Source: Bispira polyomma (taxonomy: Eukaryota). From it: a DNA stretch of 64,000 nucleotides. Positions 32,583 through 33,836 of this stretch are shown one piece after another (position 1 is the first letter of the stretch; every line of letters starts with the position of its first letter). The notes below the pieces were generated by a model. It was not told the DNA's origin. It saw nothing but the letters and a program-made list of their open reading frames with translations, and ran no database searches. Location of the stretch: positions 75,082,001 to 75,146,000 of the forward strand of contig OZ287748.1 in NCBI GenBank assembly GCA_965649765.1, in the 5' to 3' direction. Position numbers and translations under genes: made by a program.

Positions 32583-32715
32583 CAAGAGTCTGAAAGATTT
32601 TCCTCACAGCCACAGTGGAGAGCAGTCGTTTACTTCTGATGTAGTCGGCTAGCTGACCGGCCATCATAGTAGTGAAGTACATGGAGATGTAGGGAATGGC
32701 TGACAGCATTCCATT
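32583..32715 (-). CDS. SLC17 paralog B exon (NGMLSAIPYISMYFTTMMAGQLADYIRSKRLLSTVAVRKIFQTL)
   Basis: tttacag acceptor at 32718-32716 and G|gtaaaa donor. 133 nt, phase 0 to 1. NG.LSA.PY and AD...RK motifs. Confidence 0.92.
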
Positions 32716-33836
32716 CTGTAAACACATAGAGATATAAAGGGAATGGCTGACAGCATCCCATTCTGTAAAACATGGAGATGTAGGGAATGGCTGACAGCAT
32801 CCTATTCTGTAAAACATGGAGATGTAGGGAATGGCTGGCAGCATCCCGTTCTGTAAAACATGGAGATGTAGGGAATGGCTGACAGCATCCTATTCTGTAA
32901 AAAATGGAGATATAGGGAATGGCTGACAGCATCTCATTCTGTGAAACATAGGAGATAAAGGGAATGGCTGACAGCATCCCATTCTGTAAAACATGGAGAT
33001 GTAGGGAATGGCTGACAGCATCCTATTCTGTAAATCATGGAGATGTAGGGAATGGCTGACAGCATCCCATTCTGTAAAACATGGAGATGTAGGGAATGGC
33101 TGACAGCATCCTATTCTGTAAATCATGGAGATGTAGGGAATGGCTGACAGCATCCCATTCTGTAAAACACATAGAGATATAAAGGGAATGGCTGACAGCA
33201 TCCCATTCTGTAAAACATGGAAACATAGGGAATAGCTGACAGCATCTCATTCTGTAAAACATGTAGATATAGGGAATGGCTGACAGCATCCCATTCTGTA
33301 AAACATGGAGAGATGTAGGGTATGGCTGACAACATCCCATTCTGTAAAACATGGAGAGATGTAGGGTATGGCTGACGGCATCCCATTCTGTAAAACATGG
33401 ATATAGGGAATGACTGACAGCATCCCATTCTGTGACACATTGGACATAAAGGGAATGTAAAACATGGAGATATATAGGGAATGGCTGACATGTAGGGAAT
33501 GTCTGACGACATTCTGTAAAACATGGAGACATAGAAAATGTCTGACGACATTCTGTAAAACATGGAGACATAGAAAATATCTGACAACATTTTGTAAACA
33601 TGGAGACAAAAAAAATGTCTGACAACATTCTGTAAAACATGGAGACATAGAAAATGTCTGACAGCATTCTGTAAAACATGGAGACATAGAAAATGTATGA
33701 CAACATTTTGTAAAACATGGAGACATAGAAAATGTCTCACAACATTATGTAAAACATGGAGATATAGGGAATGACTGACAACATTCTGTAAAACATGGAG
33801 ATATAGGGAATGACTGACTGCATCTCATTCTGAAAA
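32680..33836 (-). repeat. Minisatellite (~27 units of 39-48 nt) made of the splice acceptor plus the start of the SLC17 exon
   Basis: Consensus unit ttttacag-AATGGGATGCTGTCAGCCATTCCCTACATCTCCATG (44 nt) equals the exon's first 36 nt plus its acceptor. A 39-nt variant occupies ~33480-33790. Confidence 0.95.

What the first reader, a model, noticed from the sequence alone, without database searches (positions are those of the whole stretch)
32680..33836. Intronic minisatellite built from a 3' splice site: a ladder of over 20 tandem acceptors in front of an SLC17 exon
Seen: each 44-nt unit is TTTTACAG plus the first 36 nt (NGMLSAIPYISM) of the 133-nt exon. AG acceptors recur at ~32716, 32763, 32807, 32851, 32895, 32939, 32984 and onward to 33830. 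About 23 of ~27 units keep the AG. The most distal unit (gtagttttcag|AATGAGATG at ~33830) abuts unique intron sequence, so it may be the ancestral junction. Only the most proximal acceptor gives the canonical protein. The acceptor at 32851 is in frame and stop-free and would insert 45 aa before TM8. Most others shift frame or hit stops. Inference: the spliceosome must skip many near-identical decoy sites, so repeat number could act as a heritable tuner of productive versus NMD-targeted mRNA. Alternatively the array may have crippled the gene.
Basis: partly seen in the sequence, partly recalled or inferred. Interest (0 to 1): 0.85.

Follow-up and report, generated by a model that had tools for sequence, protein, structure and literature searches.

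The report
Splice-acceptor minisatellite in SLC17 transporter gene
The start of one exon of an intact transporter gene, with its splice acceptor, has been copied 26 times into the intron in front of it; this is a known kind of repeat (the amphioxus "mirage"), and nothing here shows that it regulates the gene.

Summary
The array is real: 26 copies (38-48 nt, only 11 exactly 44) of the first 36 nt of a 133-nt SLC17 exon plus 8 nt of intron, 22 still preceded by AG. Only the acceptor at 32716 gives the normal protein; 32851 adds 45 codons without a stop; the other 21 shift frame or hit stops. This is an acceptor-type "mirage", known from amphioxus; related human junction repeats mostly use the site next to the intact exon. 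The gene looks alive: ten exons open, canonical junctions, no rate acceleration. The exon-proximal acceptor scores 3-4 bits above its three nearest rivals and is one of four with a branch-point-like motif. No RNA run was served, so site choice and the "tuner" idea are untested. Correction: the distal flank is not unique DNA but a 160-nt MITE whose end abuts the duplication breakpoint, and that site now scores worst of all 23. The scan reported such junction repeats before in this genome, including a 23-copy acceptor array. My SLC17 sample (6 of 215 edges) did not show their reported enrichment.

The parts
32583..32715 (-). Working 133-nt exon of the SLC17 gene (TM8 region by alignment to sialin 327-368); acceptor AG at 32717-32716, weak donor GT at 32582
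   Evidence: donor at 4th percentile of paralogue donors
32716..32762 (-). Exon-proximal 47-nt variant copy; supplies the pyrimidine tract and a yTnAy branch-like motif at -20 for the working acceptor, all made of exon-derived sequence
   Evidence: branch use is inferred
32716..33429 (-). Proximal sub-array: 16 copies of 42-48 nt, 30-35 of 36 nt identical to the exon start, all keeping AG; 221-nt higher-order period; groups of identical units
32850..32852 (-). Only unit-start spare acceptor that is in frame and stop-free (+45 aa); weak score, 1.05 bits, no branch-like motif
33430..33513 (-). Rearranged junction between the two sub-arrays (about two broken units)
33514..33785 (-). Distal sub-array: seven copies of 38-39 nt with a shared 5-nt deletion; three of seven have lost the final G of AG
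33786..33837 (-). Most distal copy with 8 nt of original intron end; probable ancestral junction (AG 33831-33830); now the lowest-scoring site, -3.4 bits
   Evidence: ancestry is inferred
33838..33997 (.). 160-nt MITE-like element, TA at both ends, imperfect terminal inverted repeats, directly abutting the duplication breakpoint
36377..36523 (-). Upstream 147-nt exon (TM7 region); donor GT at 36376; sialin 279-325 match, E 5e-14
18396..42324 (-). Span of the ten coding exons found: 42324-42038, 40912-40682, 40025-39938, 38655-38560, 37859-37726, 36523-36377, 32715-32583, 25808-25658, 24680-24590, 18578-18396; first coding exon not located
42261..42443 (-). Second junction duplicate in the same gene: 95 nt x 2 across the acceptor of the exon starting at 42324; the upstream copy has lost its AG

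Best explanation
A tolerated acceptor-type junction minisatellite (mirage). Shown: one 44-nt segment spanning the acceptor (8 nt intron, 36 nt exon, 2-nt GT microhomology at the joint) was duplicated and expanded into 26 copies that turn over in blocks. Inferred: because only the last copy continues into the rest of the exon, only the last AG gives the normal protein. Inferred: that AG wins because the intron is long (3.66 kb), the exon is defined from its single donor, and the nearest AG gives a 133-nt exon while the others give 180 to 1247 nt. It is helped by a variant last unit that scores higher and carries a branch-like motif. Any leak to the nearest spare sites is mostly frameshifted and would be removed by NMD; it is noise, not a control device.
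For: Array anatomy. Copies decay without regard to frame, with indels of 1-6 nt, while the exon copy keeps the reading frame and family-type sequence. Ten open, in-phase exons with canonical junctions; under neutrality 3% divergence would give about 3 disabling changes, P(0)=0.04, and 5% gives P(0)=0.006. No rate acceleration against four outgroups, p 0.07-0.65. Acceptor matrix from 125 SLC17-family acceptors of this genome: working site 5.25 bits (58th percentile) against 2.3, 2.3 and 1.05 for the three nearest; yTnAy in 4 of 23 sites including the working one. No GT inside the array scores above the 11th percentile of real donors, so the copies should not become exons of their own. Five other junction copies in SLC17 genes here. 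Precedents: PMC3087553, PMC3902484, PMC1557585, PMC2630376.
Against: No RNA data, so site choice is unobserved. Two spare sites score as high as the working one (33207: 5.45; 32894: 5.36), and rank 3 of 23 alone is not significant. The exon's donor is weak (4th percentile), which weakens the exon-definition argument. A first-AG-after-branch-point scan would favour upstream sites if they have usable branch points. Predicted RNA structure does not hide the spare sites. Most tested precedents are donor arrays or have far fewer acceptors.
Confidence: 0.72

Rival explanations
1. Heritable tuner: spare acceptors take a sizeable share of splicing, so array length or make-up sets the ratio of productive to NMD-targeted mRNA, or yields a +45-aa isoform in the TM7-TM8 loop.
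For: All 16 proximal copies keep AG; the three nearest give exons of 180-268 nt, within the size range of this family; weak donor; spare sites are predicted accessible. Human CBS and 6-16 donor arrays use two extra sites (PMC1557585).
Against: AG retention is not special: 24 of 44 columns are invariant in those copies, and in the distal block the G of AG is the most often changed column, 3 of 7. A stop-free in-frame site is the default, since the common unit has no stop in any frame, and 8 of 22 in frame is what chance gives. The 32851 site scores poorly. In F7, unit number did not change site choice (PMC1557585). No paralogue has a copy of this acceptor.
Confidence: 0.13
2. The array has crippled the gene: most transcripts are mis-spliced or skip the exon, and the gene is a young pseudogene backed up by its paralogues.
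For: More than 20 SLC17-like genes in the genome, one directly adjacent; weak donor; an LTR retrotransposon upstream of the first exon found; first coding exon not located.
Against: No stop, frameshift or broken splice dinucleotide in 1524 coding nt, although the distal copy differs from the exon at 5 of 36 nt; no rate acceleration; the neighbour is only 60% identical, so not a fresh backup.
Confidence: 0.07
3. Origin variant, compatible with the best explanation: the MITE caused the array. Either a break at its end was repaired with a 44-nt flanking duplication, or its insertion 9 nt before the AG damaged the old acceptor and the duplicated copy, with an exon-derived pyrimidine tract, was kept as the replacement.
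For: The intron-side breakpoint lies within 0-2 nt of the element's TA. An outward-facing end of this family lies within 3 nt of a fixed point with probability about 0.0003-0.0009. The element lowers the old site from 1.6 to -3.4 bits. Transposon ends can make tandem duplications in maize (PMC3744419, title and start of abstract only).
Against: The probability is post hoc and covers one family among many repeats. None of five other junction copies has this element at its edge. Insertion after the duplication, into a site already dispensable, is the simpler order; the C11 paralogue shows such a later insertion at a donor array. The two events cannot be ordered from one genome.
Confidence: 0.25
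4. Assembly artefact.
For: No contig spans the array.
Against: Units are heterogeneous, with two sub-arrays and a higher-order period; run contigs match 33347-33527 (two samples) and 33667-33777 with no differences. Copy number itself is not verified.
Confidence: 0.03

Closest known systems
Amphioxus 'mirage' minisatellites (Adh3, globin BflGb6; PMC3087553)
   Same: Tandem copies of intron 3' end plus exon 5' part; many but not all keep the splice dinucleotide; inner units homogenised, edge units apart; host gene intact.
   Different: 22 spare acceptors here against 3-6 units at BflGb6; only 8 nt of intron per unit, so the working acceptor's upstream context is exon-derived; splicing and length variation were measured in amphioxus, not here.
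Human CBS 844ins68 (as described in PMC2630376)
   Same: Duplicated intron-exon junction at an exon start; the downstream copy is strongly preferred and normal mRNA is made.
   Different: Two copies of 68 bp rather than 27; the unit carries a longer piece of intron (recalled, not checked here).
Human junction VNTRs: F7 intron 7, CBS intron 13, 6-16 intron 2, lamin B2, PDGF (PMC1557585)
   Same: Minisatellite that reiterates a splice site up to 25 times; the site next to the intact exon dominates; at most the two nearest spare sites are also used.
   Different: These reiterate donors, not acceptors; acceptor choice also depends on branch point and pyrimidine tract.
SLC17 transporters (sialin SLC17A5, VGLUT2/3)
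   Same: Both flanking exons match consecutive stretches of sialin and VGLUT; MFS_1 match.
   Different: Member of a local expansion of more than 20 genes; orthology and substrate not determined.

Membership tests
mirage (junction-spanning minisatellite) | Repeat unit spans an intron-exon boundary of the host gene | tested here: met
   36 nt exon start plus 8 nt intron end
mirage (junction-spanning minisatellite) | Head-to-tail units in the reported size range, 10-160 bp | tested here: met
   38-48 nt, 27 copies; range from PMC3087553
mirage (junction-spanning minisatellite) | Many but not all units keep the splice dinucleotide | tested here: met
   22 of 26 upstream copies follow an AG
mirage (junction-spanning minisatellite) | Concerted turnover inside, edge units excluded | tested here: met
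   Identical inner units (four of one type, two of another); the exon copy alone has GGA at codon 2; distal copy differs at 5 of 36
mirage (junction-spanning minisatellite) | Length variation between haplotypes or cells | not testable with these tools
   Only short contigs, none spanning the array
mirage (junction-spanning minisatellite) | Normal splicing is not disturbed | not testable with these tools
   No RNA run served; the intact gene is indirect support
regulated unproductive splicing (AS-NMD tuner) | Measurable use of a stop-bringing site that rises on NMD block and varies with genotype or condition | not testable with these tools
   No RNA run
regulated unproductive splicing (AS-NMD tuner) | Selective retention or conservation of the alternative site | tested here: inconclusive
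   AG no better kept than other columns; absent from paralogues; no related genome on hand
intron gain by tandem duplication | Usable donor and acceptor inside the duplicated unit, so that the copies splice out as a new intron | tested here: not met
   No GT in the array above the 11th percentile of real donors; intron position is shared with paralogues
SLC17 / MFS | Sequence match to sialin and VGLUT over consecutive exons | tested here: met
   E 5e-14 and 4e-8; MFS_1 E 3e-15
MITE (TA-target type) | Short, terminal inverted repeats, TA at both ends, many dispersed copies | tested here: met
   160 nt, 24-nt arms 75% complementary, 31 end matches in 251 kb against 0 in a shuffled 64-kb window
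MITE (TA-target type) | Autonomous partner transposase | not tested
   Not searched

The most novel reading that the evidence does not exclude
A transposon insertion 9 nt before an acceptor disabled it, a flanking 44-nt duplication built a replacement acceptor whose pyrimidine tract and branch site are made of the exon's own sequence, and the resulting 22 spare acceptors now divert a length-dependent share of transcripts to NMD or to a +45-aa isoform.
Probability: 0.06. Interest if true: 0.7.

Novelty: new member of a known kind. Interest (0 to 1): 0.27.

Why it matters
As a type it is known. Its value is as a natural test bed: 23 near-identical acceptors in a row, of which one is correct, would separate exon definition from branch-point-first scanning in one RNA experiment. 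The tested long arrays I could read about are donor arrays. If the MITE link held across many such repeats, it would offer a cause for mirages, whose origin PMC3087553 calls unclear. If length tuned expression, it would be a splice-based expression dial; nothing here shows that.

Tried and rejected
RNA evidence: the one run search returned three contig runs, none on record as RNA; laying them gave no spliced joint and was swamped by dispersed repeats. The zero depth over the exon may come from the tool's filter and is not a finding. Hairpin masking of spare sites: the region folds better than shuffles (z -2.6), but spare acceptors are not less accessible than the working one; rejected. Copies as mini-exons or a new intron: no adequate donor; rejected. 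Selection to keep AG or to keep 32851 open: not distinguishable from chance. Selection for stop-making variants: considered, not testable because units are not independent. Enrichment of junction copies: 6 of 215 SLC17 edges (6 of 104 outside the compact C5 cluster) against 1.3-4.4% of intronic control positions, Fisher p 0.46-0.80; the control includes satellites and the sample is one family, so this neither confirms nor refutes the scan's earlier 1-in-5 to 1-in-8 figures. Species: not identified; the Atlas search gave only MFS clusters; 'annelid' rests on earlier notes. The original Adh3 and CBS papers were not held; I rely on papers that describe them. As the operators asked, the gene was searched exon by exon and the joined step (full-length search, fold of the normal or +45-aa protein) was left out.

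Full report
Setting. The window is G000:C1:75082001-75146000 of a 1.035-Gb animal assembly in 75 contigs. Earlier notes of the scan call the animal an annelid; I did not confirm this. The array lies in a minus-strand gene. The exon before it (36523-36377) and the exon after it (32715-32583) match consecutive stretches of sialin (279-325, E 5e-14; 327-368, E 8e-6) and of VGLUT2/3. Ten coding exons were located from 42324 to 18396. All are open, their phases fit, and all have AG and GT ends. The first coding exon was not found. The genome holds more than 20 SLC17-like genes.

The observation. TRF gives 32679-33837, period 44, 27 copies. There are 26 copies upstream of the exon. Each is the exon's first 36 nt followed by 8 nt of intron ending in AG. 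Twenty-two copies follow an AG. Sixteen proximal copies (42-48 nt) keep 30-35 of 36 exon bases and all keep AG. Seven distal copies (38-39 nt) share a 5-nt deletion, and three have lost the G. A rearranged stretch joins the two blocks. With the phase-0 donor at 36376, 14 spare sites shift frame, 7 are in frame but stop at 32892 or 33249, and one (first base 32850) adds 45 codons without a stop. Two weak AGs inside units are also in frame and open (32889, 32790). The unit occurs nowhere else in the genome. Run contigs match two parts of the array exactly, so it is not an invention of the assembler, but its copy number is unverified.

The distal edge. It is a 160-nt element at 33838-33997 with TA at both ends and 24-nt inverted arms. 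Its end motif occurs 31 times in 251 kb at up to 4 mismatches and not at all in a shuffled window. The bases either side form a short palindrome around the TA, as expected of a target site (inference). So the distal AG is probably the ancestral junction, with the element inserted 9 nt before it. The site scores -3.4 bits as it stands and 1.6 bits without the element. The duplicated segment begins within 0-2 nt of the element's end. The chance of that is under 0.001 for this family, but the test is post hoc and five other junction copies show no such end.

Which AG is used. This could not be observed. The run search found three contig runs from two samples and none on record as RNA; laying them showed no spliced joint. 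Indirect evidence: a matrix built from 125 SLC17-family acceptors of this genome scores the working site at 5.25 bits, the 58th percentile of real sites. Its three nearest rivals score 2.3, 2.3 and 1.05. It is one of four sites with a yTnAy motif upstream, a motif found at 87 of 126 real acceptors. The gain comes from a 47-nt variant of the last unit. Two spare sites score as high (32894, 33207), but they would give exons of 312 nt and more. Against this, the exon's donor is weak (4th percentile), and predicted folding does not hide the spare sites.

Is the gene alive. There is no stop, frameshift or broken splice dinucleotide in 1524 coding bases. Under neutrality 3% divergence would give about three such changes and 5% about five (P(0) 0.04 and 0.006). 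The distal copy differs from the exon at 5 of 36 bases. Amino-acid changes unique to this gene are not in excess of those in its neighbour against four outgroups (p 0.07-0.65). A crippled gene would have to be very recently crippled.

Is the array selected as a device. Nothing points to it. In the proximal block 24 of 44 columns are invariant, so keeping AG is unremarkable; in the distal block the G of AG is the most changed column. Eight of 22 sites in frame is chance. The common unit has no stop in any frame, so an open nearest in-frame site is the default. No GT in the array reaches the 11th percentile of real donors except one at that level, so the copies should not form exons or a new intron.

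How common. The same gene has a second junction copy (95 nt x 2 at 42261-42443, AG lost). Paralogues on C11 and C13 have four more, among them a 102-nt x 3 donor array in the same intron. That is 6 of 215 edges, all outside the compact C5 cluster, and not more than intronic control positions (Fisher p 0.46-0.80). Earlier notes of the scan report one edge in five to eight and a 23-copy acceptor array in a protocadherin gene; these are unchecked AI notes, and my one-family sample does not reproduce the enrichment.

What is known. Tandem copies of intron-exon boundaries are named mirages in amphioxus. At globin BflGb6 the unit is intron 3' end plus exon 5' part, with 3-6 copies; many keep AG; RT-PCR suggests normal splicing; the mechanism of origin is unclear (PMC3087553). 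Adh and troponin C mirages give no aberrant mRNA (PMC3902484). In human CBS 844ins68 the downstream junction copy is strongly favoured (PMC2630376). In human donor arrays only the authentic site, or also the two nearest, is used, and F7 site choice did not change with 1 to 12 units (PMC1557585). The array meets the four sequence criteria I could test; length variation and splicing outcome could not be tested.

Verdict. A real, large, acceptor-type mirage in an apparently working SLC17 gene, most likely tolerated (0.72). The tuner reading is open but unsupported (0.13). The one point not in the papers I read is the transposon end at the breakpoint. Interest 0.27. The gene was searched exon by exon; the joined step was left out.

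Noticed in passing
window 42261-42443 (-): Second junction duplicate in the same gene, 95 nt x 2 across an acceptor; the upstream copy has lost its AG.
   Followed up: partly
L013:809-1120 and 1121-1489 (C11 paralogue): 102-nt x 3 array built from the donor of the same intron; a 369-nt element with 11-nt inverted ends and an 8-nt target duplication (hAT-like) sits between the real donor and the copies.
   Followed up: partly
L068 and L078 (C11 and C13 paralogues); C11:15260906-15261258: Further exon-edge copies: a donor and an acceptor-side copy in the C11 gene, an acceptor copy at 93 nt in the C13 gene, and a second hit to the 151-nt exon 218 nt from the first in the C11 gene (not fetched).
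   Followed up: partly
window 43173-44867 (-): 565-aa open stretch with reverse transcriptase and RNase H matches, LTR-retrotransposon type, just upstream of the first SLC17 exon found. Observed only.
   Followed up: no
window 165-1823 (-) and L041: Adjacent compact SLC17 paralogue, 60% identical in protein, with much shorter introns and no junction copies.
   Followed up: partly
G000:C5:76.23-76.55 Mb: Cluster of about a dozen SLC17-like genes; in several, the intron between the last two loop exons seen here appears to be absent.
   Followed up: no
window 34145-34400 and 32357-32477: Very high-copy dispersed repeat; a partial copy lies 100 nt past the exon's donor.
   Followed up: no
window 32582 (-): The exon's donor is weak (4th percentile), and a better-scoring GT lies inside the exon (37th percentile).
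   Followed up: no
window 13947-14493, 29892-30480, 22214-22684, 28463-28705: Other tandem arrays with periods 143, 141, 244 and 109.
   Followed up: no
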